Part shown: positions 28,333 to 59,206 of the stretch, piece by piece | Position numbering within the stretch: the stretch's first letter is position 1 | How the letters are laid out: each line of letters starts with the position of its first letter | DNA from: Setoptus koraiensis | Lineage: Eukaryota > Animalia > Arthropoda | NCBI GenBank assembly: GCA_048013815.1 | Contig: CM106585.1 | Location: 3,658,001-3,722,000, forward strand | Reading direction: 5' to 3' | Length of the DNA stretch: 64,000 bases | Program-made: the position numbers and the translations under genes | Notes under the pieces: generated by a model | What the model was told of the DNA's origin: nothing | Seen by the model: only the letters and a program-made list of their open reading frames with translations | Database searches by the model: none

Positions 28333-31300
28333 ATGGCCGCGGTGTGGCCGCCGGGGGCCCACGGCACGGCTGGCCAAGTTTCATTGTTGATATTGATCAT
28401 GTTATTGTTAGCCAGCACTCATATTACTAATGGCATCGCAGATAATACTGGCGCCGTTGATGACTTTTCATCGATGTCACCAGCATCTAGTGTCACACAA
28501 CCAGCGCAGTGTGGACAGCACCGGTGCACCAACAGCACCAGCAGCACCAACAGCACCAACAGCGACAACAGCGACACCGCAAGATACTCAAACCAGCCTC
28601 ATTTCAATAGCAACAAATCAACAACAACAACAACTGCTGGCCGTTTTAGGCGAGCCGTCACCAGAGAAAGTGAGTATCGTCTAATTGAAATGGCAACACT
28701 CTAGATCCAAATGTTAAAATAAAATTCTCGCTCGTTTGTTGTCCCGAATGTCGTGGGCAAACGGCCCAATTGTGGTGCAATAAGCAATGGAGTGAGTGCG
28801 AGTGGGGGCTACCTAAGCTCACAACTGCCAGATAATGCGTCAGGTCGATGGAGCGAGCTCGACTCAACTTATCTCGCAATTGTGGGCACAAACTAATTGT
28901 CAGTGTGTGTGCAAACCGTGATATTGAAACTTGTTTTGTTTGTCACCATATTGCCAAATGTCGCCAGCCAGTCAGCCAGCCATTTTTGCTTGTGCCATTT
29001 TATTATTACTTCACTTTATTTTTGTTTTGTCGTCTCTGTAGCATCTCTGGCATCTCCAGCGTCAAGTAGCAGTTGCAAGCATATGAGCAGTGCAAGTTGC
29101 AGTAGAAGCAGATGAAATAACTCATATTATACAACTCACATTATATAACTGTTGTTATATAATGTACTGCTACTTATATTATAATTTTAAGATGGAGACA
29201 TCGCGAATTCATTGGCAGACATTGGCTCGCATGATGATGACAGATGGCTGTTGTAGCTTACTTGTAGCTGGCCCCTTGTAGCCGAATGCCAAATGCCAGT
29301 TGGCTAGACTGCAAGGCAAAGCAGTGTCAGCAAGTAAACAGTTTGCTACCAAACTGGCGCGCCAACAGCAGCGCCAGAGTGATATTCCTGAAGGAATTGG
29401 CATTGTCTTTCTAGTGTTTTATCTCGAAATATCCCCGCCAGTTGCATCAATGCCACTGTTGGCCATTACTCTCAGGAATTGTAGCGCCAGCTAATGTTGC
29501 CAGTTGGCAAACAACGAGCAGTTTTACTTTTACTTTTATTTATATCAGTGGCACGCTGGTGAAAATTTTGCGCCACTGCTGAATACTGGGTGCAACTGGG
29601 TGCCTTTACAACAGAAATCTGATGCCTCTCGAAGCGACTTGATCCGATCTGATTTCGCTTTTATGTCGTTTTTCCTTTTCACTGTGAAACACCCATGAAA
29701 TTGCTTGCCCAAGGAAAAGAAAAACTTTTCAAAACTATCGACTGCTCTCCGTCTCTCGATTATATCTCGCTCTTTAAGTAGTTGTAATAGCGGCACACAA
29801 CTTGCTACCAACAAGTAACCTAGCCAGTTACGTAATACCTCAGTGAGGCTGCGCCGCAACCTCAGTGAGTAACGGCACGAGAGAGAGCGAGAACATTATG
29901 GCCAAATTATTACATAGTGCACATTGTGTACAATTGTACGATTGTTGCAATTGATTATACTGGCACTGCAAACACAAGTAACAAAATAACTGAGCCAGCG
30001 CTCTTTTTTGGGTGAAATATGAGAGTGTTGGCTCATATAAAGGCATGTATAACGTATATATAAGTGAATTCATTTGGCCCATTGATTCAAACAATGATGA
30101 TTGCGCGCCCGTGAATTAGTTATCGCGCGAGTTACACCGAGCGCCAGTCACCGCCTGGCACCAACGCAACGAAACAAAACAAAATAAGTTGCCGTTTCGC
30201 AGCTCAAGGCTCTCACTTTATCACATTATTACGCAATCGGGTGCATTATCACTTGTTCATTGTTCACTTGGTGTCTTCATTTTTGTTGCCGGTGGCCGGT
30301 TGCGCGGTGGCCAGCGCGCGCGGGCCAATGTCCGGCTCGCCACACTCGCCAGAGTGACCAGAGTCACTACAGTTACTGCAGTCAGTGCAGTCGACGACGA
30401 GGTCAACTGCAGCAACTCAAGTAATTAAGCTAATCAATCAGAGCCTTTGTTAGATTGCGCGTTACTTTGGTGTGACACTTGGCAACACTTGACAAGACTT
30501 TATTTTGTTTGGTTGCTTTTGACAATTGCTTGCTACGCACTGCGTACACTGTCAGCTGTACGGCTACAGCTGACACAATGCGCCATAAATACCGTTACAT
30601 AACCGTAGTATATATAAAAAGTATACAACGGCTAACGGTAAACAGTGTTGCTGTAACAGTAGTTAGTAGTGCAAGGTGCCCCCATTACAACGCTGTGCCC
30701 AATGAATGCTGGATGTTGCTGCATGCTTGCGAGGGGCCCCCAATTGTTTGAATGGATGAGATGGTGTAAAGAGTGTAAAGAGAAGATTACATAATACGGT
30801 TACAAACAATGATGATAATCGCAAAATTGTTGTTCTCGCTACAATGAGCATGAATTGGCGCGTAGATTGGCAGCAACAAACTCTTGCACCATCTGCAATC
30901 TACAATTGTCCAGTGTATCCCTGCTTGTGTGTCCATGTCCGTCCGTGTCCGCCCACGTATTCCCCCACGTGCACTTGTCTTGACACAATTGACCATTGCA
31001 ATGCCGTCGAGCATCTTGAGCGTGAGCACAAACATGGCCAAGTTGATTAAGCTTCAATGGCCACTGTTTGATGCTGGCCCCTCGCAGATAAATGTTGAAC
31101 TAAAAGTGAAATTAATATCTCGCTTCAAGCTCCATAAAGCGTTTCTATTATCAGTTTAGCTGCACACACCATATAGAGGCACGAAATAAATTAACAGCGC
31201 CACACTGCACAAGCAAACAAACAAACAAACAGATTGTTTTGCTGATTGGCTTTGAAGCAAAAAGTGTAATCTTGATTCGCACCCTCAGAGGGCAAATCAA

Positions 31301-33236: not shown

Positions 33237-34690
33237 CGGCTGAAAATGTTTGCAAAACGGCAACCATCCTATCGTGATTTGATGATTACTGACTAATCAT
33301 TGATTAGTCAACTGTGAGGACACAACTGACAGTTGCAGTTACTGTACTCTATCTCGTTGCAATAGGCGACGAGACGGAGTTGACAAGAGATGATAAAGTC
33401 GACTGCTGTCACTGTCCGATTGACTGTCGTTCAGAATAACGACAGTCAATTGAAAGCGAGCCTAATGATTCATCAGTAATGAACCTAGCGACTGGCGGCA
33501 CCTTGCATCTATAGTAAATCTCGAGTCGATCAAGCAGAATAAATAATTTCGCAAAGCAAACAAATCCGAGCAAAGAAATCCGAGCAAAGAAATCCGAGAA
33601 AATGTCAGCCACTTTGTCAGCCACTATAGCGACTGTAGCGTCCAATCTCGTATATTCTCGCCATATATACCTGGTATTACTAGCTACAGTACGGAAACGT
33701 TTATAAGCACGTCAACTGGTGCGAGTTGAGCATTTTAAATAAATATCTAATTACTCTCTACTCTTACCTTCTGTCAATTCGCTGAATCTATCCGCTACAC
33801 GCTGCGTTGATCAACAACGACGACAACCGTACGGATCAACAAACGGGGCTGCAAACAAACAGAGAAGCCAATACTAAACGAATTCTCTTTTCCGTCGAGT
33901 CTCGTTCAAGGTAAGCAACTATATATTGATATTATTATATTATCCAGTGTATATTATTTACAGCCAACTGAACAGTAGCGCTTGTGAGAGACAAACAAGC
34001 GAACGTTGTCGCAAGTGTGTCAGTGTTTCATCAATTGTGTCACTCAATCGTGTCACCCGAGCAGCTAGACGGCGCTGCGCAATCAATACAAAATGTATAT
34101 GCACACTATGTATAACACATCAGTACACATTGGGTATCTGAGGCGCCCTCATTGATACTAACTAGTGACTAGATAGTTAGTATGGTTACAATGGCACTAG
34201 GTGCGCCTATTCAATGTATTCAGTATCAGTCAATGTGCAAGTTGCGTCATTAGTCGGACTAGTCGGACAAGTGCAATTGGTGGGGCCGGCGACAAACGAC
34301 TATTCGCATCTATTGCCTTCCGTTGTCGTTTGTCGTTGTCCGTCGTCGTCGTCGTCGTCGTTTGTCGTTGTCAGTTGGCGTGCAATGGCTTCGATTTGAG
34401 AATGCTGAATTTGGCCAGTTGCACACCATGAGACGACCAATTGCCAATGAGCGACAATTGTGAGTTCCGTTGTGAGTGCTGGCAAGTGTATTTGTTGTGC
34501 TCAAGTGTGACTTGAGTCGCCAGTCACCGCTAGCGGCTAGTTTACGAAACAAATATGTGTGGCCATAGAAAGAGCGGCTGCCACTCATTATATTTGACAC
34601 TATTTTTTGAGGGCCCCTCATTGGCGTCACTGCAACTAACAATATATGCTTTTGTGCATGCTGGTAGTCAGTATTATGTTGTGTATGCGC

Positions 34691-34721
<31 letters not shown>

Positions 34722-37700
34722 GCTAACCAATGACAACAAATTGTGACATAATAATGAGCTGTCGTTTGTCGTTGGCCAACAACATTGTGCCGTCCAATGG
34801 AAGCCATACAATTTGTATGATGCAAGCAATGACTGACACAATTGAATACACATAGCAAACAGGCCGCTGCCTTCGAGGGCCTCGGCTCGCTGTTGGCAAT
34901 GACGCAATTGCCAACAGCGAGCCGACTCACGCCATAAAGACTCACGAATAGTGAGTCAGAGACTCTGAGGCGGACACTCTGAGAAAAGCTGCCCATTGAG
35001 CTAGTCGACAACGACAATTAAATTCATTGCTGATTGAAACGACTCAACTGGTGTAGCACTGCTGACACTTGCACCTGTGTGTTTGTGAGTTACATAACAC
35101 TACATTTGCATTACGTAACAACACGAGCACGTTGATGGCAACGTGGCAACTTCTTGTTTAGTGTCGCACACACACACACAAGAATTGCCGTACAAGAGCC
35201 ACTGACAATGTGAGGTCAGCGGCAATCTCTAGAGGTCAAACAAGTAGTGCCTTAATACCTTGGTGCAACCTTAATAGTGTGCTGACCACGGCCAACGCGC
35301 GCCCAATGGTCAGCAATGGCCAGTCCAATGGTCAGCAATGGCCAGTCCAATGGTCAGCAATGGCCAGTGTGCAGTTGCGGGCACAGAGCGGGCTCATTAA
35401 GCGGCCTAATTTGCATTAAATTAGTTTTTGATGAACTACACTAGGCAACATGATACTACTGTGCACAGTTGGCTGTGAAACTGTAAACTTATGCAATTCT
35501 AAAACTCACCACCCACTACTACTATTTTTATCGCATTTGCCATTAACGCGCTCGTCCCAAAATAAAATATCGTTCGTTCTCTTTGGCCATTATCTCTGGC
35601 TTCTTTTGCTTGTTGCGCAACCTCATAATTGTGCCGCTTAAAACAACCCGCCAACCGGCCAACAAACAAACGCTCTCGTCAAAAGGAATGAGGTAAGTCC
35701 AATAATTGTTACTCTGTGCCCCACTTAAGCGTAATCATAATCGCTCATCGCAACACACACACACACACACACACGCCAGTGGCAATCAGCTGAATGAAGG
35801 AAACAACCGGCAACAACTTCATATATCACCAGTTCAAGATCACCCATTTACAGCCAGCACAGTACACACTCTCAAGCAAGCGCTCAGCGCCCAAAAATAG
35901 CGAGACGCCAATTTCAAAACAACTACCCACTGTTGTCATGACTTACGCAATACCTGACAGTTACCTGGTGACATATGGTTGTCGCCAGTGGCCAGGCACT
36001 GACATTGTGATGAATCACCCTCATGATGACTCACCTTGGGTTTAGTTCATTTGGACACTTTCAACTTAAATTTAACGCTTGCCTAACCACTGAGCCATGC
36101 ATTTTTTGCTTTGGTTTGGCCTCTTTTGATTGCTCGTACCTATCGCTCGTGAAAACAAATGAAAAAGCCAGTTGCCATCATACAACTTGTATGTGAGCGA
36201 AAATTGTTTCAAATCCGAGCTCATGCAATGCGACAGCTAAATGCAGCACTTGTTCATCAAACTTCATGGCAATATAAAAGCCAACTTATACTAACAGTGT
36301 AACAAAATGATCGGCTTCTCATGGACAGCATGTAATTAAATTAAATGTTTATTAAATATATTGCTGCATGGAAAATACTGCTGCTATGAAATGGCCACGA
36401 TGAGGCCAGTAACTGGAAAGAAAAGGCGAACAAGCATTTATCCTACATCTGATAAAATCAATGTAAGGCGGACCCAACGCAACGCAACGCAACCAGCCAA
36501 CCAGGCAGATCTGCACCGGAAGTCGCTTATCTGATCTACGTTCTCGCTGTTCTGCGCCGATCTACCAAACTAAATATGATTTATGCCGGGCCCGGCCCCA
36601 TTGAGGCCTCGGCCTACAAACAAACTCTGGCCCGACAAACAAACCCACTGATCGAGCACCGAAACTGGCTGCACACTCCTGGGCAGTCAGTTAGAGAAAA
36701 CAGTGGGCATTTATTGGCACATATATAACCATTCGTGATTCATCTATTTATCGCTTCTCGCCACTCAATCACATATAATGTGTGTGTGTGTCGATGAAAA
36801 CTCACATAGTTATCAGAGAGAAGATGTAGCTAAAGCTGTTGACTTTTCTTTTTCTGCCCACTGTCTTTTGTCAACCATGGTCCCTTATGTCATGTCATGT
36901 AGATTTGTGCTCATGTGCACCATATTAGACGGGGACGCACCAATAAATATTAAATGGTTCAAGGATGGTGCGGAATTGTCCAATAAGAACTCTATAGATA
37001 TTGAATTGAGTTCAGCCGGAGAATTAGGCTCAACATTGGTCTTCCGGCGCGTCCATCAAAGTCAAACTGGAAACTATACGTGCCTTGCCTCTAATCAGGC
37101 CGGTCAAGCCTCATTCACTTCGTTCATGTCCGTTAAAGGTGAGTGCTCACTAGCTGCTGTGTTGTCGTTGTTGTTGTTGTTGTCGTGTCTCCAATTTGTT
37201 TCGTTTCGTTCCGTCCGATTTCGTCCAATTGCATCCAATTTTATCCAACTCTATTCAATTGATTGTCACACACAAACAGAGAGACAGTTTGCGCTGCAAG
37301 TTGGCACGACGACACATCGCTTTGGCGAGATTATTTGCTTTTGTTACATACGCTACAAATAGGCGAGCGTCTCTTGAATCGATCATTTTTATTCTCGTTG
37401 GTTGACTGTGTGTCTGAATTGAGCACTAACAGCCAGCATTTCACACTCGACACAAGAACAAACGACACAGGCACAAGATGGGGCCAGAGGGCTCGTCTGT
37501 CTGTTTGTGTGTCAGTGTGGGCCCCGCTTAATCCTTTTGAATGGGGCTCGGCGCGAAATCTGGTGTCAGTCGGACGTTGTCCAACATGCTGGCGCTAGTT
37601 AGTTATTTTATTAAGCCATATGTTTTCATCTTTGACAATATTTACTGCTGTCTGTTGCAGCGACAGCAACAACGCCAACGACAGCAACAACAGCAACGAC

Positions 37701-40700
37701 AGCAACAACAACAGCGACATCGGCACACAGCGACAAGCGAGGGGCGCCAGAGAAATGAAAAATGGTCAAACTTATCGTCAGCATCGGTGGTCGTGTGTCA
37801 GCTGATTTCAGATGTCACTATCATCAATATTGTATGGCTGGCCCAAAAGAGAGCGAGAGACAACTAACGACATTTCAGCGACTCAATTGCTTTGCTGGCT
37901 CAATTGGCGTTTGCAACACGATGTGAAAATGTCACGCTTCATTTCAGTTTGGGGCCGCTCTCTCTCTCGAATTATCCCATCAGGTGGGCGTGTGGGCATC
38001 AGCTGATGTGCACCTAGCAGCGGGTTGTTGCTGTTGCTGTTTGGTTGGGGTCGCCCTCTCAATTGGCCTCCATGTCTGGCAGTCTATCAATTCAAATTAG
38101 ATTTTGTGTGTACCGTTTGGCGGCGGTTGCTCGCTCGACGCGCCACCTCAAGCACCTCCGAAGGCCCCATCCAGCTACTGGCCCCATTGAGCTGGCCCCA
38201 TTGAGCTGGCCCCATCGAGCCCGACCAAACCAACCAACTAACCCACGCAACTAACTAGAGCCAACTGAGCGAGCTATAGCGAGCTGCTTCGAGAGCGTGC
38301 TGTAGCGGTCGTAATAGTTACCTTGTAAATCCGGCTAGCGACACACAGCAGCGAGCCGTAATATCTGAGCCGTTCAAAGTGTCACCAACGCCAGGCTGCT
38401 GCTATTTTGGTATCAGGCAATGTCACTGGGATGTTATATACATTGAGTAGTGCTGGTAGTAGTGGATTTTGAGCAGTTATAATATTATAAATGTAGAGCT
38501 GTCTACTTGATGGTGGCCTCAACTTCTTTGCAATATTCCCCTGATATATAGCAATATTATCATGCCATTGTGAATGATTGCCGTGTGAGATGTGAAGAGG
38601 CCGTAAGAATAAGTTTGATAAACATATACGCAGACCGAGAGAGAGCATACATAATAGAGTTGTCAAATGTTGCACATAGCTACTTATATCTGACATAAAA
38701 TGCTGACTGGCCGCCCTGCTCGTCGCGCCAACCATACACTACCTATAGACTCTACACTACGGTATGTATACCAAGAGTATAGACCCAAAGAGATGTAAAT
38801 GGATAGTTGGCGCGCAGAGATGGGGCCCGGCTGCCAAGACGACACTGCCAGCCAGCCAGCCAGTCGGCCAGCCAGCCCGGCTGCTCAATATCGCATGAAT
38901 AATGACTCTACTTTTTACCATTATTGTTACGTGCTTGAGGCCCGGCGCGCAAACCGGCCAAGTGGGCCGCCACTCGCAGAACGCATGCATTGCGACAGTG
39001 CAAAATTATACATCTCGAAACTATAATTTGCCCGGCCCGCCACGCAAGGCGTTCTGGCGCTGCTGTGATTTGGAACGGTGCCGATGCTGCCGGGCCCATT
39101 TTGGCAAATTTCATCTAAATCTGGCGAATCGCGATTTAGATGAAATGCCACAAGCAAATGGCCAAACAATCCAGTCAATAGTCATCGTTTATTTATATAG
39201 TCAGCCAGTTGCAAATTTGTCCACTAGAGTCTAGTGACTAGACTCTAGTGACTAGAGTAGCAGAGATAGCAAATTGGCACACCAGTAGCGGGTTTAATTT
39301 GAGCCTGGCTGCCGGTTACGACGTGGGCAAAGTTACTAATTATCAGTGACAATTGAAAGCTATTATCCGGCTATCATCGCAGCCATCAATTGATAATTTG
39401 CTGTAGGTGAGTGGTTGTTTTTGGCTGGCACTCAGGCCCGCCAACAGTGACCAAAACACTAGCTACATGCCGGTAGATGGCCAGTGTTTTGGCCGTAGCG
39501 AGTGGGTGGCGCTTGGGTGGCAAATTGGTAAATTGGTTTAGAGATTGCCAGTAACTATTATCCGGTAACCTCCGACTAAGTGAGCCGCCCACTCGGGCCC
39601 CTGTACCAGCAGCCTGTATCATACAGGCTGCATTATACAGGCTGTATTATACAGGCTGTATGTGGTGAGCGCGTAAGTGTGCCCCCCGTTTCCACTTTGC
39701 GGCTTGCCTGATACCAGCAGACAAAATTGAATTAGACAATACAAACTTGCTGGTTGGTGGCGCAAATTTTCAAATTCAATTTATTTGCACCAGGCGCGCA
39801 CGTAATAATTTAATCCGTGCCCAGTGCCGCTAATTCTCATCGTTTGCCACCGTTGGTCTATGGCCGGTCTTTTACATACTCTCTATAATCATATAATATG
39901 CCAGCCTCTCGCTCTCGCTATTACATAGCCATGCTATTACATAACTCTTGAGCTATTATATAAGGGCACATTGTACATATTGTGCCGTATTATACGTGTG
40001 CCGGTTGTTGTGCGAGGCCCTAGGGTCATTGTGGTTCGCGACTTGGCGCCAGTTGCAACTCAATAGTCAACTCACTAGTCACGAGCCACGTTGGCCTGGC
40101 CGAGCCGAGCCGAGCATATTGCAGCCACTGTTATGGGTTCACGTTTGCAGTGTTGCGTAATGTTACGCAACTGGCAATTGGCAGTGCTCGCAGGTTGCCG
40201 GCTGCCAGTTGCAACCTCTCATTAGTGGACACTGTCATGAGTGGGCACAATGTGCACCCATTAACCTGCAGTATCTTTTGTAGAGTATATTATCTTGGCA
40301 AAATGCTGAGCTCAATCTCTCACTCACACTATCGACTATTGCCGAACACTCATTAACATTGAATTTATTTGCCCCGAACCATTTCTACTAAACGACGACG
40401 ACAACAACAACTGCCGCCGCCGCCGCCCCAAAACAACAACTTGCCCAAAACAACAACTTGCGCCGGCTAAAACCCAAAAATGGACCCCATTTGCGACCAT
40501 TTGTGCCACTGTGTTACTGCGTGCCGTTTGCACCGGCAACACACACACAAACTAACACACAAACTAACTAACTAACAAACTAACCCGCACCCTGGCACCG
40601 CGGCACCGTGCCCAATTGCATCATTATTACTCTGGATGGTGTTTGGATAATAATCATGATAAATACAGTGCCTCCACGATGGAAATTGGAGCCCACGGAT

Positions 40701-41119
40701 CAATTTGCCATAATAGGCGACACAGTTGTAATAGATTGCCAAGCCGAGGGGTAAGTCTAGTCAGTCGATGTCGGCTGTTTGCGATAATATGACACACACA
40801 CACTCTTGCCTCGTCTCGCCTCGCCGGTAAAGTGTCTTTTCGACATTTTCGACACAACTCTAATCTAGTGGCGAGTGCCGGCCGACGACTACGTGTCAGC
40901 GCGCTGATATCATTAAAGTTTATATATTTCTCAATGTGACAATATGTCTGTCTCATTGAGTACACATATGTCATGTGTCACTGATGATGATGGTCAGTTT
41001 TGCAGTTTTTAAACTGCCCCAACTGCTGGCACCCACTTGCCGGCGTCACTTGCCAGCGTACCCATGCCCTATCTGTGTCGTCCGTCTGGGCGCCTCGCTG
41101 CGGACTCGGCTGGTCAGCG

Positions 41120-47100: not shown

Positions 47101-50100
47101 CGAGATATGTCTGGCACGGCTCCGATGGCTATCAAATTGATATAAATAGCACTAACGCAATCAGTCAGCGATTTGCATGCTGCCTGAAACACTCAATGGG
47201 CTCTCTGGCTGGCTCTTCAAAATCTCTGCTCAATCGAAACAGATCGCGTGAGTCAGATTTTGTCAGTATTTGAATTTGCGTCTACCACCAACGGTGACAC
47301 GCTCACTGGCAGCCGTCGCCGGACCAGCCCGTGCCCTCGTCGGGCCCACATTGGGCCCACCCTGGAGCCACACTGGAGCCACATTGGGCCCACATTGGGG
47401 CTCTTGTCTAATGAACGAGCTTCGAAACTGCACTCATCTCAGAGAAGTGGCGATCAAGTAGTTGCAATGGCATGCGCTCGATGATTCATGTTCATCTTGG
47501 CCGCGCCATGCCATTGAATTGCCATCGGAGTCAATGGAAATAATCCACTAGATCTCATGTCTGCACTATTGCTCGCCATCAATGATTCCAATGAGCATTT
47601 GATCGTGATTGCATGACAAGTTGCTGGCAACTTGGTGCCCAGCACAAGCGAGAATATTGATTAATAATAATCGACTTGCCATTGGGCGAGTCACCCGCAG
47701 TTCCATTAGACGTCGTGTGTAAAGCGGATATATGTGGATACATATAGATGGTATGCAAATGGTGTTTGCTCGCTCCAATCGCTCACTACCACATACATAC
47801 ATGTACCCACACAGATATATATTTATATATATCAGATATATATTTATATACATCAGATATATATTTATATCTGTGTGGGTATATGTATGCATGTGGTGGA
47901 CAACTTGGTAAACGACGACAACGGCCAGCAACACAACACTAATCACCTTGCCAATCTTGACCCAATTTCGCGCCTCTTTTATGCCCTGCTAACATGCCCG
48001 CCGACGTGTCCGCCTGGTATTTCAAACACACAGACTTGCACGCCCATTTTTCTTCAAAATTATCCAGATCATCATTGCAATCGGCCGACAATTCGTCGTC
48101 GTCGTCGATGCATAAGTCGTTATCGTCAGCGTCAGATGAGCGACATCATCAGTTGGGCTCCTCTATCAATATGATGATTGATAACAATAACATTCTCGCT
48201 AACAATAATAATCATTTAGAATCTTCTGGGCCGGATAATCAGTTGGTCAGTTTAGAGCTGGCCTTCGAGCGGGCACAAGAGGACCAACAGCAACAACAAC
48301 AGCACCAATTGCACCAACAAATGCAGTCAAATTTCAAATTAATTAACAGCAATCATTACATGCAATCGCTAGAAAACGGTTCATTGTCTATACGGATGAT
48401 CAACAAAGAAAATGAGGGCTACTACATGTGCGAGGCAGACAATGGAGTCGAGCCAAATCTAAGCAAAATAGTCAAACTGATCGCTCATCATCAGGCCTCA
48501 TTCAAGAATGGTCATTTGTTTAAATTGATCAAATTGTTACATAACGAACAAATTAAGCTCGACTGTCAGCCTATTGGCGACAAACCGCTGACGGTTCAAT
48601 GGTTCAAAGACGGCCAGCCGATATCGTTGCCCCTGGACGGAAGTAAGCGCCACTCGGTGTCCGATATGGACTCGTACGCCTCCAATCAGAGGTGAGTTTT
48701 CTTTCAGTCCAGTCTAGTCTGTCTCTCTTGAAACTTCTTTTTGCTGCTCCGATATACAATTATGTAAATTTTGTTGTTGTTGTTGTTGTCGTTGTTGTTG
48801 TTGTGGTTGTTGTTGTGCTCACCATGACAGATTTCACTTTGATACGCGCGACTCAGAGGACGGACTCAGCAGTGACGCCATCGGACCGTCGGCGCAACGT
48901 TCTGACTCGGCGCTATACTCTTGCTTGGCCAAAAACAATTTTGGCTCTAGCGAACGCAAGCTGCGCGTCGTTGTCATGGAACGACCCGACAAACCGGAAC
49001 AAGTGGATATTGTGCAAGTGTCCAGCAGATCTATCAGTTTGCGCTGGCTGGCCCCATTCGACGGCAACAGTCCCATAACTCGATATCAGTTTGAATACAA
49101 ACGGCACAAAGGTGAGTCATTAGCCAGCGGTCGCACCTGATAAAGCGTCACTTTTCATAAAATCCCACCACCGATTCTGATCAAACCGTGATTTAACCGT
49201 TCCAATTGCCCGTTCTGAATTTCGATCGCGTCATCTACTCGCGCAAATCCACCACGAATTATTACGATTGATCAAATTAATTAATTAATTGATCAATTTG
49301 AAATTGATTGCAACAGAGCCCTGGTCGGCGGCCACCACCATTGAATTTGCGGCCGCACCTGTCGGGCCCATGCTAACCAATCTTGGTGGCAAAATATATT
49401 CCGTCACAAATGATCGTCAGCAAACTGACGGGCTCGCTGCAACGGGCTCCTCAATGGACCAAGGCACCACAAGCAACAACAACAACAACAACAATCAGAT
49501 TTTAATCGACGCTAATCAGTCGCCTTACACTCACTTAATGAGCCAAACAGGAAGTGACAGCCAAGTATCGCAACATCAGACTATTGTCATGGATGTGCCC
49601 AGTGGTCAATTACAAGGGGGTGCCACGCTAACCGGAAATTCGCTTACAACGGTAACGGCAAGCGCCAATCAGCAGCAGCAATCTCAAGCTGCCGCAAACA
49701 ACAACAAACAAACTATTCAGCATAGTATACAATCGTTACAACCATTGACTAGATATTCAATTAGAGTTAGTGCGATCAATGCCATCGGCAAAAGTGGCCC
49801 CAGTGTCGCATTGGATATTCGCACGGAAGAAGAAGGTAAGTTCACCTGGCGATCACCTAGCTTCTTTGTTTGTTGTGCTCACTTGTCTTTGCATGCTCCC
49901 ATTTGCCAACTTATTTTCGCTCTTCCTATCTCCGGCCTGAAATATATTTATATGTATATATATATTTCTTATCTCGGCTACAACTATTATCATTATTGTT
50001 GTTGTTAGTATCGTCTTATTTTAGCTATAATAATATAAGCTGATGCTCATCTGGCAATGGGTGCAATAGCAGCCAGCATCTACTAAATGATATAAATATT

Positions 50101-56100: not shown

Positions 56101-59100
56101 ATGGTCAGCAGCCGTCAAGTCCGGGCGGTTTGTCGCTGTTGTCAAATTCTTCGAGAAATTCCGTTGCTCCATTGGACGGTTTTATACTCAGTTTTGCTCT
56201 CATGACGCCCACCGCGTCAACGACCGATATGAGCAACATGGCCGACACGACAGCAAGAGGCAAAATTGTTGTCAGTCCATTATTGTCCACCAACGGTGCA
56301 CAACTGGACAACGATCAGCGGCCATCTAGCGGCGATTACCAGAGCAAGTCATCAACAGCCACTAACAAGAGCGACATCAACGGCGTTAGTGCCCCACCAT
56401 CTGCCACTAACAAGCTGACGGCTCCCGCGTCGGGTGTTGCTATCACGCCCAATCAGTGGCAATCCATCCAGTTGCCGGCTCAGCAGCGCAGCTATCACCT
56501 GAAGAGCTTAGATTGTGGCACCTCGTACGCCCTCTGGATAATGGCTTTCAACAAGGTGGGCAAAGGTGAACCGAGCGATATGCTTACGCTGACAACTCGC
56601 GGCAAGGGTATGTTACACCTGATCGTAATTATTCAGTAATGACTTTCAGTCATTTATATTACATAAGAATTATCACTGTCACGTCATCTGTTATTGACAA
56701 TTGTTTCTCCTCAATTTGAATTGCTGCCCATCCATTCGAAACAGCTCCCGTGGCCCCCGATAAGCGATCGTTTCTCACCATCAACGTAACCCAGGTTCGT
56801 CTTCATTTGAGCGCCTGGTACGACGGTGGCTGCGAAATTGACCACTTCATGATACAATACAAGCCTCGCCTGCAGGAGGAATGGGTCACCCTGTCCGATA
56901 ATATATTACGTGAACAGGTGAGCGTTGTCATACGTGACCTGTTACCTGGAACTTGGCATGATTTATTGGTGACAGCAAAGAATCAAGTTGGACTTACCGA
57001 TATCAAATATAGATTTGCCACTTTAAATGTAGACGGCAGCACAGTGCAACCACTGCCTCAGGATCTATTAAGTGCCCAGCAAAGTAACGGTGCCGACTCT
57101 AACGGCGACGACAAAAGTGCCGACGACAGAGGGCGCAACCCAAATAACTCTCTAGATCTATTGTGGAGGGGCTGGCATTGGAGCTGGCGACAATTATTCA
57201 ATGATCCACTGATATTTATACCCGTCTTGTGCACCCTATTTGTGCTGGCCTCAATACTGTCCTTTGCATTGTTTATATTTGTTGTTAGATGGCGCCAAAA
57301 GCGTTTACTTACTCATCTAGTGGTGTCGTCGGCAACAGCGACAAACAATTGTCACAACAACCCACAAACATCATTGCATCATCATCAACAGCACCAACAA
57401 CATCAGCAGCAGCAGCAACAGTTATCACCACATCATATGAATATTCATGGATCGCCATTGACAAGCAGCAATAGTCAACATAATAGTAACGCAAGCTCGC
57501 CAAAGAATGGACTTAATACGCGAAATCACATCAGCAACTATCAACAACAACATCAGCATCACATGCATATTAATGCCAGCAATCAAGCCGGTCATCTATA
57601 TGACACTATGCATACAATTAATCAGCAACATTATCACAATCAGCAATTGACACTGAGGCAGCAGCAGCAATCAAACAGCGGCCAACAATTATTAGCTTGT
57701 CCAGACAGCCAACAACAAATAGCCATGGGTGATACACAGCTCATAAATGGCACTTCCTGTCAAATTGGGCAACAGCAATACAATCAACAGCAGCAAACAA
57801 TTAGCTTAAATAATAACACTGATTTATATGGTACATTGCGCCCACATGAACATGTACATTCTCATTTGATTCAATCAAATCACCATCAGTCGTCACCACA
57901 TCACAATAATAGCAACACTGTTGCTTATTACGCAACAGGTAACCAACACCAAGGCGGCACATGTATGTTCCCACCGGCCGGACAATACAATAGTAATAAT
58001 AATAATAACAGCAATGTCGATCCAACAAACAATGGCGATGCTCTGGCAAAGCAAGTGACCATGCCAAATCAGACGGCATTTGATGAGCTAACAAGCAGTT
58101 TGAATACATCGTACGATCGTATGGCTCAACGTCTTCTTTTGAATGGTTACGCAACATTGAATGGTAACAGTAACGGCGGTATTAATGGCAAACGATCAAA
58201 CATCGAGGCGGCCTTACATAAGTCACATCAATTGAATTTGAGTAACTTGATGAATCAACAACAAACTGACGATATATCACTAAATGCCTATTCTGTTAAC
58301 AACAATTCGGCATCTAAATATGCCTCGTCGTCCACATCGGCCTTCACCAGTGCGACTGCCTCAACAACAACCACCACAAGTGTTGATGCCTCCATTATTA
58401 CAAATAATTCTCAGCAAAACGTTGATCAAAATGATAATGTAATCACAAGTACAGCCACTGATTCCTCTAGTGGCTACAATTCGTTCGCAAATTCAACAAA
58501 TCATCGATCATTCAATGGGATGGCGATCAGCACTGACCAACAGCATCAATTGGCAAACGGTGATGCTACTATGAATGATTTATTGCATTACAACTACAAT
58601 AAACATGGTAACACTGCAACAACAGGATCAACAAATAATAATAACCAGTTAGATGGTGATCAAAATCATTTTTTATCCGAGGCGGCGTTTGATTCAATGG
58701 CTGAACAATTGCTAGCAAGTGACGATTGTCAATTATCGTCTATAAGCATGTCACCAGAAATCAAGAAGCAGCCAAAAGAATCTACCAATAGGTTAGATTA
58801 TAGCAACAACAATAAACAATTTGGATCAAACGCCGATGAGACAGCTGTTGATAGTGACAAAGTTCGTCAAATATCAACCTCAACAACAACAACAACAACA
58901 AAAGATAATATACAAGCACCAGCCACAAAAGATGATGATGGTGGTGTCCAGCGAAATATTCATAATTGGTTTAACGCAGCGGCCACAGACGGGGCCATCA
59001 AAGGATCTGTATTGCTGCGATTGAGCCCAGCAAAGCAAATTATCCCCAACAATTTGGTTGACTTAAACACCAAAGTGGGAGTAATTGATCGAGACCATAT

Positions 59101-59206
59101 ATACGATGTGCCTTACAAGTACAAACACGATCAACTCAAGCAACAACAACATATGACAATCAACTTTGACAGAAGCAAGCTCCAGTCTGTATGTCGCTAT
59201 AATTAA
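28333..59206 (+). CDS. Dscam: Shortened Dscam (sDscam-like): SP, pro-segment, Ig7, Ig8, Ig9, FN1, FN2, FN5, FN6, TM, cytoplasmic tail. Exons 28333-28669, 33863-33910, 35686-35692, 36903-37138, 40669-40750, 44594-44646, 48034-48691, 48831-49111, 49317-49835, 54902-55786, 55891-56607, 56745-59206 (6285 nt, ~2094 aa)
   Basis: Every junction is GT-AG and phase-matched, and the total length is divisible by 3. Reconstructed motifs: KPILNEFSFPSSLVQGMRFVLMCTILDGDAPINIKWFKDG (Ig7-like); VPPRWKLEPTD..DCQAEGNPAPFIRWK..ENGSL..EGYYMCEADNG (Ig8); DSALYSCLAKNNFG (Ig9); PFDGNSPIT (FN1); LDCGTSY (FN5); AWYDGGC..DLLPGTWHDL (FN6); TM PLIFIPVLCTLFVLASILSFALFIFVV. Confidence 0.88.
32281..32375. repeat. 14-bp tandem repeat ACTGACCATTCGCT, ~7 copies
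   Basis: Directly visible in Dscam intron 1. Confidence 0.9.
33171..33235. repeat. (GT)n microsatellite, ~32 units
   Basis: Directly visible. Confidence 0.95.
33863..33910 (+). CDS. sDscam 48-nt exon (Ig strand A: KPILNEFSFPSSLVQ)
   Basis: AAACAG| acceptor after ~130 nt with no AG; |GTAAGC donor; phase 1 to phase 1; encodes the conserved P-I-x-x-F-x-F-P motif. Confidence 0.85.
35303..35368. repeat. 22-bp tandem repeat CCAATGGTCAGCAATGGCCAGT x3
   Basis: Directly visible, ~320 nt upstream of the 7-nt microexon. Confidence 0.9.
35686..35692 (+). CDS. sDscam 7-nt microexon GAATGAG (completes G-M-R)
   Basis: AAAG| acceptor after 215 nt with no AG; perfect AG|GTAAGT donor. It is the element that bridges phase 1 (33910) to phase 2 (36903) and gives the conserved G-x-R before the first Cys. 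Confidence 0.8.
40669..40750 (+). CDS. sDscam 82-nt exon (VPPRWKLEPTDQFAIIGDTVVIDCQAEG)
   Basis: ATACAG| acceptor, |GTAAGT donor; Dscam Ig8 N-terminal signature. Confidence 0.9.
42331..42443. repeat. 10-bp tandem repeat CACGCAGCAC, ~11 copies (8 perfect)
   Basis: Directly visible in the Dscam intron between the 82-nt and 53-nt exons. Confidence 0.95.
44594..44646 (+). CDS. sDscam 53-nt exon (GNPAPFIRWKQSVMPLSS)
   Basis: AATCAG| acceptor, |GTGAGT donor; G-x-P-x-P-x-I-x-W Ig signature; phase 2 to phase 1. Confidence 0.85.

What the first reader, a model, noticed from the sequence alone, without database searches (positions are those of the whole stretch)
33731..36928. Frame-shifting 7-nt microexon that builds the first Ig domain of Dscam and could act as an on/off splicing switch
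Seen: the first Ig domain is assembled from a 48-nt exon, a 7-nt microexon (35686-35692, GAATGAG) and a 236-nt exon, separated by 1.8-kb and 1.2-kb introns. The microexon has a perfect GTAAGT donor, a weak AAG acceptor and a 215-nt AG-exclusion zone (35469-35683) containing U-rich/UGC tracts. Skipping it gives ...LVQ-DLCSCAPY-TAG (stop at 36926-36928). Established: bilaterian neural microexons are typically controlled by SRRM4/Srrm234-type factors through upstream UGC elements and usually preserve frame. Inference: this one is not a multiple of 3, so productive receptor would depend on its inclusion. That could give a cell-type-specific expression gate via NMD or a short secreted peptide.
Basis: partly seen in the sequence, partly recalled or inferred. 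Interest (0 to 1): 0.8.

Follow-up and report, generated by a model that had tools for sequence, protein, structure and literature searches.

The report
Seven-base Dscam microexon, born by intron insertion
A mite Dscam-family receptor gene almost certainly needs a real 7-base exon to keep its first immunoglobulin domain in frame, because an extra intron sits seven bases inside what relatives have as one exon; nothing suggests it acts as a switch.

Summary
Exon 33863-33910, the 7-nt GAATGAG (35686-35692) and exon 36903-37138 have canonical splice sites. Joined, they encode one I-set Ig domain reading ...LVQ-GMR-FVLMC....

No RNA run exists for this organism, so the evidence is comparative:
- A spider Dscam aligns without gaps and has the same G-M-R.
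- In five related genomes with DNA in hand, these seven bases are continuous with the large exon. One relative (L005) starts that exon with the window's microexon and exon start joined.
- Two other diverged genomes share the split. In L001, AG + 7 nt + 21 intron bases form a 30-nt perfect block inside an otherwise diverged intron. A third genome (run X4) shows no change listed across the microexon and donor.
- All 12 window/L001 differences in the joined coding sequence are third-codon-position changes.

So the microexon is very probably real. It most likely arose when a 1.2-1.5 kb intron was gained 7 nt into an ancestral 243-nt exon.

The on/off switch idea has no support. No UGC lies near the acceptor. 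The weak AAG acceptor also occurs in three of the five relatives whose exon is undivided. Long AG-free zones also precede the next exon.

This is a tidy example of microexon birth and a new member of a known kind. This scan also noted another candidate intron gain elsewhere in this genome.

The parts
28333..28669 (+). Candidate exon 1. It has an ATG, a hydrophobic leader (…VSLLILIMLLLAST…) and a low-complexity N-terminal stretch. It ends one base into a codon before gtgagt.
   Evidence: Sequence read. Its phase 1 matches the two bases that open exon 33863. No RNA evidence; inferred.
33863..33910 (+). 48-nt exon encoding the A strand of the Ig7-like domain (KPILNEFSFPSSLVQ plus the first base of Gly).
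   Evidence: It is 47/48 identical in L001, and the one change is at a third codon position. The same peptide is followed by gtaagt in relatives L005 and L006.
35469..35683 (+). 215-nt AG-free, pyrimidine-rich zone upstream of the microexon acceptor.
   Evidence: rank 3 of 3566 intervals. The sister genome has 199 nt AG-free at the same place although the sequence differs. Relatives with the undivided exon have 54-120 nt.
35686..35692 (+). 7-nt microexon GAATGAG. It supplies the last two bases of Gly, all of Met, and the first two bases of Arg.
   Evidence: It is identical in L001, and no change is listed there in the third genome X4. L005 has the same 7 nt continuous with the large exon.
35693..35752 (+). 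Conserved start of the downstream intron. The donor GTAAGT plus 15 more bases are invariant (35693-35713). A second invariant 22-nt block lies at 35731-35752. These are candidate splicing enhancers.
   Evidence: Alignment A2. The region is predicted to be unstructured.
35693..36902 (+). 1210-nt intron that is absent at this position in relatives and outgroups. It is the probable lineage-specific gain.
   Evidence: It is 1498 nt in L001 and alignable only at its first ~60 and last ~13 bases. No other copy was found in the 64-kb window.
36903..37138 (+). 236-nt exon encoding the rest of the Ig7-like domain (FVLMC…SVK).
   Evidence: Pfam I-set, 2.1e-12. Its best single-domain match in the PDB search is Dscam1 Ig7, 3dmk residues 638-710. 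It differs from L001 at 11 positions, all third codon positions.
36926..36928 (+). TAG reached if the microexon is skipped.
40669..40751 (+). Start of the next exon (VPPRWKLEPTD…, Ig8-like), preceded by a 356-nt AG-free zone.

Best explanation
GAATGAG at 35686-35692 is a genuine coding exon, most probably included constitutively, of an N-terminally shortened Dscam-family receptor gene of an eriophyoid-type mite.

Origin. It exists because an intron (1.2 kb here, 1.5 kb in a sister genome) lies seven bases inside what related mites have as a single 243-nt exon. The ancestral acceptor and the first seven exon bases were left behind as a microexon. The new intron supplies a consensus GTAAGT donor and ends in TAG just before the rest of the exon. 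Gain in this lineage is the most parsimonious history.

How it is probably spliced (inferred, not shown). An exon of 7 nt cannot be defined across its own length. The two introns are therefore probably removed one after the other by intron definition. Removing the downstream intron first would rebuild the ancestral 243-nt exon behind its ancestral acceptor. The invariant donor and the conserved ~60 nt after it would help.

Consequence of skipping. Skipping would give a premature stop, but that is a by-product of the exon's length and not evidence of a designed switch.
For: Reading frames are under selection.
- All 12 differences between the window and L001 in the joined 291-nt coding sequence fall at third codon positions, and no residue changes.
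- Both exon frames are therefore real, and they are offset by 3n+1.

Homology.
- The spider protein P0003 aligns without gaps across the junction and has E-G-M-R where the window has Q-G-M-R.
- Leptotrombidium P0023 has G-K-R at the same place.

The undivided state in relatives.
- Twelve related ORFs carry M-(R/K)-F-V-L-M-C in one continuous reading frame; ten of them start at that Met.
- The DNA of L002-L006 shows the acceptor ag| directly before G-N-ATG-(CGC, CGT or AGA)-TT.
- L005 starts its exon with the same 23 bases as the window's microexon joined to exon 36903.
- L005 and L006 carry the A-strand exon 289 and 672 nt upstream, so they are orthologous.

Conservation of the split.
- L001 has TTAG|GAATGAG|GTAAGT.
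- The surrounding 30 bases are a perfect block in an intron that is otherwise 75% identical or unalignable.
- The same run's C-terminal exon is only 67% identical in protein.
- A third, different genome (run X4) shows no change listed across the microexon and donor.

Uniqueness. It is the only one of 73 frame-restoring candidates that gives G-M-R.

Outgroups. The Ig7-like domain is a single exon in Leptotrombidium and in a pancrustacean-type exon array.

Mechanistic argument (inference). cDNA-mediated loss of this intron alone, while keeping an intron only 7 nt away, would need a crossover inside those 7 nt.
Against: - There is no transcript evidence of any kind. No RNA run holds the exon, and the four runs laid are DNA.
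- The tree of the exon is an unresolved polytomy, so polarity rests on parsimony and outgroups.
- Eriophyoid mites are known for massive intron loss and minimal gain (PMC7738191).
- No donor sequence for the intron was found. It has no second copy in the window and no terminal repeats.
- The resemblance between the exon end ATGAG and the intron end ATGTAG is too short to count.
- The splicing order is pure inference.
Confidence: 0.72

Rival explanations
1. Inclusion of the microexon is regulated, for example by an Srrm234/SRRM4-type factor. Skipping then shuts off receptor production in some cells through a premature stop and NMD, or makes a short secreted peptide.
For: - Skipping gives a stop at 36926-36928, 210 nt before the next junction.
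- The acceptor is a weak AAG behind a long AG-free zone, and that zone is kept at 199-215 nt in two genomes.
- In Drosophila, Srrm234 drives inclusion of the Dscam exon 9 (Ig7) variants (PMC6800468, title and abstract only).
- Most Drosophila microexons flanked by exons are alternative: 68.9% in PMC8042270.
Against: - No RNA data exist.
- The nearest TGC is 54 nt from the acceptor in the window and 122 nt away in L001, so the UGC element is neither close nor conserved.
- The sequence upstream of the microexon is not conserved.
- The acceptor is TAG in L001, and it is AAG in 3 of 5 relatives where the exon is a normal 243+ nt exon.
- A 356-nt AG-free zone precedes the next ordinary exon.
- The skipped product would lose the whole receptor.
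- The consensus donor points to efficient inclusion.
Confidence: 0.08
2. The microexon is real but old. The split was ancestral to these mites, and the intron after the seven bases was lost in the other lineages, so nothing was gained here.
For: - Eriophyoids lose introns at very high rates, mostly precisely, and gain few (PMC7738191).
- The tree does not place the window lineage inside the undivided forms.
Against: - Both outgroups examined lack the intron.
- At least 12 relatives lack it, against one small clade that has it.
- The relatives whose upstream flank reaches far enough (L005, L006) keep the intron that lies only 7 nt upstream, which cDNA-mediated loss would be expected to remove as well (inference).
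- On any topology this history needs at least two events, against one for a gain.
Confidence: 0.17
3. The junction is not used. The first Ig domain is decaying, or transcripts start inside the intron, or they use another acceptor such as the in-frame AG at 36927-36928.
For: - An in-frame ATG lies just upstream of exon 36903.
- An acceptor at 36929 would restore the frame without the microexon (sequence).
Against: - All 12 substitutions are synonymous in both exons.
- The alternative acceptor would delete the B-strand cysteine and FVLMC, which is conserved in every relative.
- A start inside the intron would leave no signal peptide.
- The microexon and its donor are perfectly conserved.
Confidence: 0.03

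Closest known systems
Constitutive ultra-short coding microexons (3-15 nt) of animals and plants
   Same: It has canonical splice sites and a consensus-strength donor. Its length is not a multiple of three, so omission breaks the gene model. It lies in a conserved domain. [quoted passage not shown] Microexons of 3-7 nt are documented in Drosophila (PMC8042270).
   Different: Inclusion has not been shown by RNA here. The ancestral undivided exon is still visible in relatives, so the birth of this microexon can be reconstructed.
Neural microexons controlled by SRRM4 / Srrm234 (eMIC domain)
   Same: It is very short and lies in a neuronal cell-adhesion receptor gene, with a pyrimidine-rich upstream region.
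   Different: It does not preserve the frame. It has no UGC close to the acceptor, and none is conserved in the sister genome. Tissue-specific inclusion is untested.
Chelicerate shortened Dscam (sDscam; PMC4835542)
   Same: The N-terminus is a leader followed directly by an Ig domain equivalent to Dscam1 Ig7. That domain is encoded by more than one exon, and Ig1-6 are missing.
   Different: The window holds a single 5' cassette and no tandem array. The membrane-proximal DSCAM-type FN3 domain (PF25059) is present, whereas sDscam lacks FNIII6. The Ig domain is in three pieces where an sDscam cassette has two.
Lineage-specific intron gains
   Same: An intron is present in one small clade at a site where the coding sequence of relatives is continuous and identical across the insertion point. 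It sits at an AG|A site.
   Different: No source sequence, target-site duplication or repeat family could be shown from 64 kb. The host lineage is otherwise known for intron loss.

Membership tests
Dscam family | DSCAM/DSCAML membrane-proximal FN3 domain (PF25059) | tested here: met
   107.2 bits against a cut-off of 39, E 5.6e-31, on window:56720-59203.
Dscam family | Ig domain that resembles Dscam Ig7 more than other Ig domains | tested here: met
   Its best single-domain match in the PDB search is Dscam1 Ig7, 3dmk residues 638-710, 41.5 bits (titin ranks higher overall only by summing several weaker domains); several chelicerate sDscam structures also match. It aligns without gaps to the spider Dscam homolog.
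Dscam family | Canonical architecture of ten Ig and six FN3 domains | tested here: not met
   tblastn of spider P0003 finds nothing for its residues 1-233 in the window. Only three Ig-like domains precede the FN3 domains.
Chelicerate sDscam | Lacks Ig1-6; the leader is followed by an Ig7-like domain | tested here: met
   Signal-peptide exon 28333-28669 is in phase with exon 33863. No upstream Ig exons were found. The exon join is inferred.
Chelicerate sDscam | Tandemly arrayed alternative 5' cassettes | tested here: not met
   Only one Ig7-like exon set in 64 kb.
Chelicerate sDscam | Lacks FNIII3-4, FNIII6 and Ig10 | tested here: inconclusive
   A membrane-proximal PF25059 domain is present, which speaks against this feature. 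The FN3 domains were not counted rigorously.
SRRM4/Srrm234-dependent neural microexon | Length 3-27 nt | tested here: met
   7 nt.
SRRM4/Srrm234-dependent neural microexon | UGC-containing element close upstream of the acceptor | tested here: not met
   The nearest TGC is 54 nt away in the window and 122 nt away in L001. The upstream sequence is not conserved.
SRRM4/Srrm234-dependent neural microexon | Neuron-specific alternative inclusion | not testable with these tools
   No RNA run holds the exon, and the runs laid are DNA.
Constitutive coding microexon | Canonical AG/GT borders, required for the frame, encodes conserved residues | tested here: met
Constitutive coding microexon | Junction reads showing inclusion | not testable with these tools
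Lineage-specific intron gain | Intron absent at the orthologous site in relatives and outgroups, with continuous coding sequence there | tested here: met
   L002-L006; Leptotrombidium L010:3945-4244; L008.
Lineage-specific intron gain | Phylogeny that polarises the change | tested here: inconclusive
   The exon tree is a polytomy with a long window branch.
Lineage-specific intron gain | Identifiable source of the inserted DNA | tested here: inconclusive
   There is no second copy in the window. The whole genome could not be searched.

The most novel reading that the evidence does not exclude
The intron at 35693-36902 is one of several recent intron gains in this eriophyoid lineage, a group otherwise famous for purging introns. 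On this reading an active intron-creating process, landing near exon edges, explains why first readers keep reporting candidate microexons in this genome. This locus would then be a datable, three-genome example of how a microexon is born.
Probability: 0.15. Interest if true: 0.65.

Novelty: new member of a known kind. Interest (0 to 1): 0.38.

Why it matters
Practical value:
- Any gene model that misses these seven bases will truncate or frameshift the only Dscam-type receptor at this locus. The same risk applies to other genes of this genome.

Evolutionary value:
- The locus shows both states side by side. Relatives carry the undivided exon and a small clade carries the split one, with identical coding letters across the break.
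- Clean cases of microexon birth by an intron arriving next to an exon edge are uncommon, and this one is in a lineage known for intron loss.

It does not currently say anything new about the regulation of Dscam.

Tried and rejected
- RNA evidence. The run search found no RNA holder. The contigs of X1-X4 are colinear with the introns, so they are DNA.
- Other frame-restoring microexons. There are 72 other AG/GT-bounded candidates. None matches the homologs, whose alignment has no gap.
- In-frame acceptor at 36929. It would delete the conserved FVLMC and its cysteine, so it was rejected.
- RNA family inside the intron. Rfam gave only two sub-threshold chance hits, the best E 0.14.
- Local RNA structure around the microexon. 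The region is less structured than shuffled sequence, with z-scores +1.6 and +1.1.
- Pairing between the two ends of the new intron (35745-35763 with 36779-36797). It is mostly CA/TG repeat, no better than shuffles, and absent in L001. Rejected.
- Copies of the intron elsewhere in the window. None found.
- Outgroup structures. The Fragariocoptes contig stops 62 nt before the partial gene, so it shows no Ig1. The spider Oedothorax gene was not on record.
- Tree to polarise gain versus loss. Unresolved.
- Short direct repeat at the intron borders (ATGAG and ATGTAG). Too short to weigh.
Full report
**What is in the sequence**

- Exon 33863-33910 is 48 nt, bounded by cag| and |gtaagc.
- GAATGAG lies at 35686-35692, bounded by aaag| and |gtaagt.
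- Exon 36903-37138 is 236 nt, bounded by tag| and |gtgagt.

Joined, they read KPILNEFSFPSSLVQ-GMR-FVLMC...SVK. Without the seven bases the frame runs into TAG at 36926-36928.

The 215-nt AG-free zone 35469-35683 is real. It is the third-longest of 3566 such intervals on this strand.

**The gene**

- The large downstream exon carries the DSCAM/DSCAML membrane-proximal FN3 domain, at 107 bits against a cut-off of 39.
- The 236-nt exon is an I-set Ig domain. Its best single-domain match among solved structures is Ig7 of Drosophila Dscam1, and several chelicerate sDscam structures also match.
- The nearest named relative is a Dscam-like protein of the eriophyoid mite Fragariocoptes setiger.
- A spider Dscam matches Ig7-, Ig8- and Ig9-like exons and then FN3 exons in the window. 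Nothing in the window matches its first 233 residues.
- An exon at 28333-28669 starts with ATG and a hydrophobic leader. It ends one base into a codon before gtgagt, which fits the two bases that open exon 33863.

So "first Ig domain of a shortened Dscam-family receptor" is a fair description. It is not a canonical sDscam. There is one 5' cassette and no tandem array, and the membrane-proximal FN3 domain is present (PMC4835542 for the definition).

**Is the microexon real?**

No RNA run holds the exon. The four runs that do hold it are DNA, because their contigs run straight through the introns. That also shows the 1210-nt intron is not an assembly artefact. The case therefore rests on comparison, and it is strong.

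1. Homology across the junction. The spider protein aligns without a gap and reads ...SLEEGMRSSIIC where the window reads ...SLVQGMRFVLMC. A Leptotrombidium Dscam-like protein has G-K-R at the same place.

2. Uniqueness. Of 73 stop-free, AG/GT-bounded candidates of length 3n+1 between the two exons, only this one gives G-M-R, and it alone has a GTAAGT donor.

3. A sister genome. Contig L001 comes from another public run, whose C-terminal Dscam exon is only 67% identical in protein.
   - It carries the same three pieces.
   - Its introns are 1707 and 1498 nt long. They are about 75% identical or unalignable to the window's.
   - AG + GAATGAG + 21 intron bases form a 30-nt perfect block, followed by a second invariant 22-nt block.
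   - A third, different genome (run X4) also covers 35659-35745, with no change listed before 35710.

4. Selection on the frames. All 12 base differences between the window and L001 in the joined coding sequence are at third codon positions, and no residue changes. Both exon frames are therefore under selection and are offset by 3n+1. Something of that length must be spliced in between, and the only conserved island that fits is the microexon.

**Where it came from**

A search with the large exon found twelve related ORFs that carry M-(R/K)-F-V-L-M-C in one continuous frame; ten of them begin at that Met. DNA was in hand for five of them.
- In all five the acceptor lies directly before G-N-ATG-(CGC, CGT or AGA)-TT. 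The seven bases are therefore the first seven bases of one continuous exon.
- L005 begins that exon with exactly the 23 bases obtained by joining the window's microexon to exon 36903.
- L005 and L006 also carry the A-strand exon (KPILNEFSFPANLVQ, then gtaagt) 289 and 672 nt upstream, so these are orthologous structures.
- Each public run yielded only one form of the exon, which argues for orthologs over paralogs.

The window lineage therefore differs by one extra intron, placed between AG and A of the arginine codon.

Outgroups lack it. The Ig7-like domain is one exon in Leptotrombidium and in a pancrustacean-type exon array.

The exon tree is an unresolved polytomy, and eriophyoids are known for massive intron loss with few gains (PMC7738191). 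Loss in the relatives therefore cannot be excluded. Two things favour gain.
- Gain needs one event on any topology, while loss needs at least two.
- cDNA-mediated loss would have to remove this intron while keeping another only seven bases away. That is my inference, not a test.

I put gain at roughly three to one over loss. No source for the inserted DNA was found in the window.

**How it probably works**

Seven bases are too few for both splice sites to be recognised across the exon. That is established knowledge for mini-exons and I cite it from memory.

The simplest route is stepwise removal of the two introns. If the new intron goes first, the ancestral 243-nt exon is rebuilt behind its ancestral acceptor. 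Three observations fit efficient, obligatory inclusion.
- The consensus donor is invariant.
- The two blocks after it are invariant.
- This stretch has no predicted secondary structure.

The splicing order is inferred and untested.

**The switch idea**

Nothing supports it.
- The nearest UGC is 54 nt from the acceptor here and 122 nt away in L001. The upstream sequence is not conserved.
- The weak AAG acceptor is TAG in L001. It is AAG in three of five relatives whose exon is undivided, so it is probably inherited and not a regulatory adaptation.
- A 356-nt AG-free zone, the longest in the window, precedes the next ordinary exon.
- The AG-free zone before the microexon is longer in the two split genomes with sequence in hand (199-215 nt) than in the relatives (54-120 nt). 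This is worth noting, but it rests on few genomes.
- That skipping causes a premature stop is true of every exon whose length is not a multiple of three.

**Verdict**

It is best explained as the remnant of an exon start cut off by an intron, most likely a lineage-specific gain. The regulatory reading is unsupported.

Microexons of this size, including frame-dependent ones, are known in flies and plants (PMC8042270, PMC8831610). This is therefore a new member of a known kind. Its modest extra value is as a clean, comparative example of microexon birth in an intron-poor lineage.

An earlier follow-up in this scan reported another candidate recent intron gain elsewhere in the same genome (s1-321306). 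I did not test that report.

Noticed in passing
window 40311-40666: This is the longest AG-free stretch of the window (356 nt). It lies directly upstream of the acceptor of the next Dscam exon (40669, VPPRWKLEPTD, Ig8-like). Very long AG-free zones may be a habit of this gene or genome.
   Followed up: partly
window 35303-35368: Three perfect tandem copies of a 22-nt unit sit in the intron upstream of the microexon. Contigs of runs X1-X3 lack one copy, so the copy number varies between data sets.
   Followed up: partly
window 34882-34925: A perfect 19-bp inverted repeat with a 6-nt loop lies in the intron between exon 33863-33910 and the microexon. BLAST did not align this stretch to L001, so it is apparently not conserved there.
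   Followed up: no
window 34576-34605 and 34726-34760: Two short blocks are 91-93% identical to L001 inside an otherwise diverged intron. They may be regulatory elements.
   Followed up: no
window about 49130-49290; L007:62-799: The first FN3 domain is interrupted in the window (a gap between ORF pieces). The Fragariocoptes setiger gene is continuous there (P0002 residues 1-246 in one block). This is another intron-position difference within the same gene.
   Followed up: partly
P0008, P0009, P0011, P0013, P0015-P0018 (alignment A1): Relatives carry N/Q/G-rich insertions of up to about 45 residues in one loop of this Ig domain. The window's copy has none.
   Followed up: no
L011:4463-6979 versus window 56720-59203: In the sister genome the C-terminal exon (last FN3 domain, membrane span and tail) is only 67% identical in protein, while the first Ig domain is 100% identical. 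Constraint is very uneven along one receptor.
   Followed up: partly
L008:1273-8934: This contig from run DRR353006 holds a tandem array of at least eight Ig7-like single exons. It looks like the alternative exon 9 cluster of a pancrustacean Dscam1.
   Followed up: no
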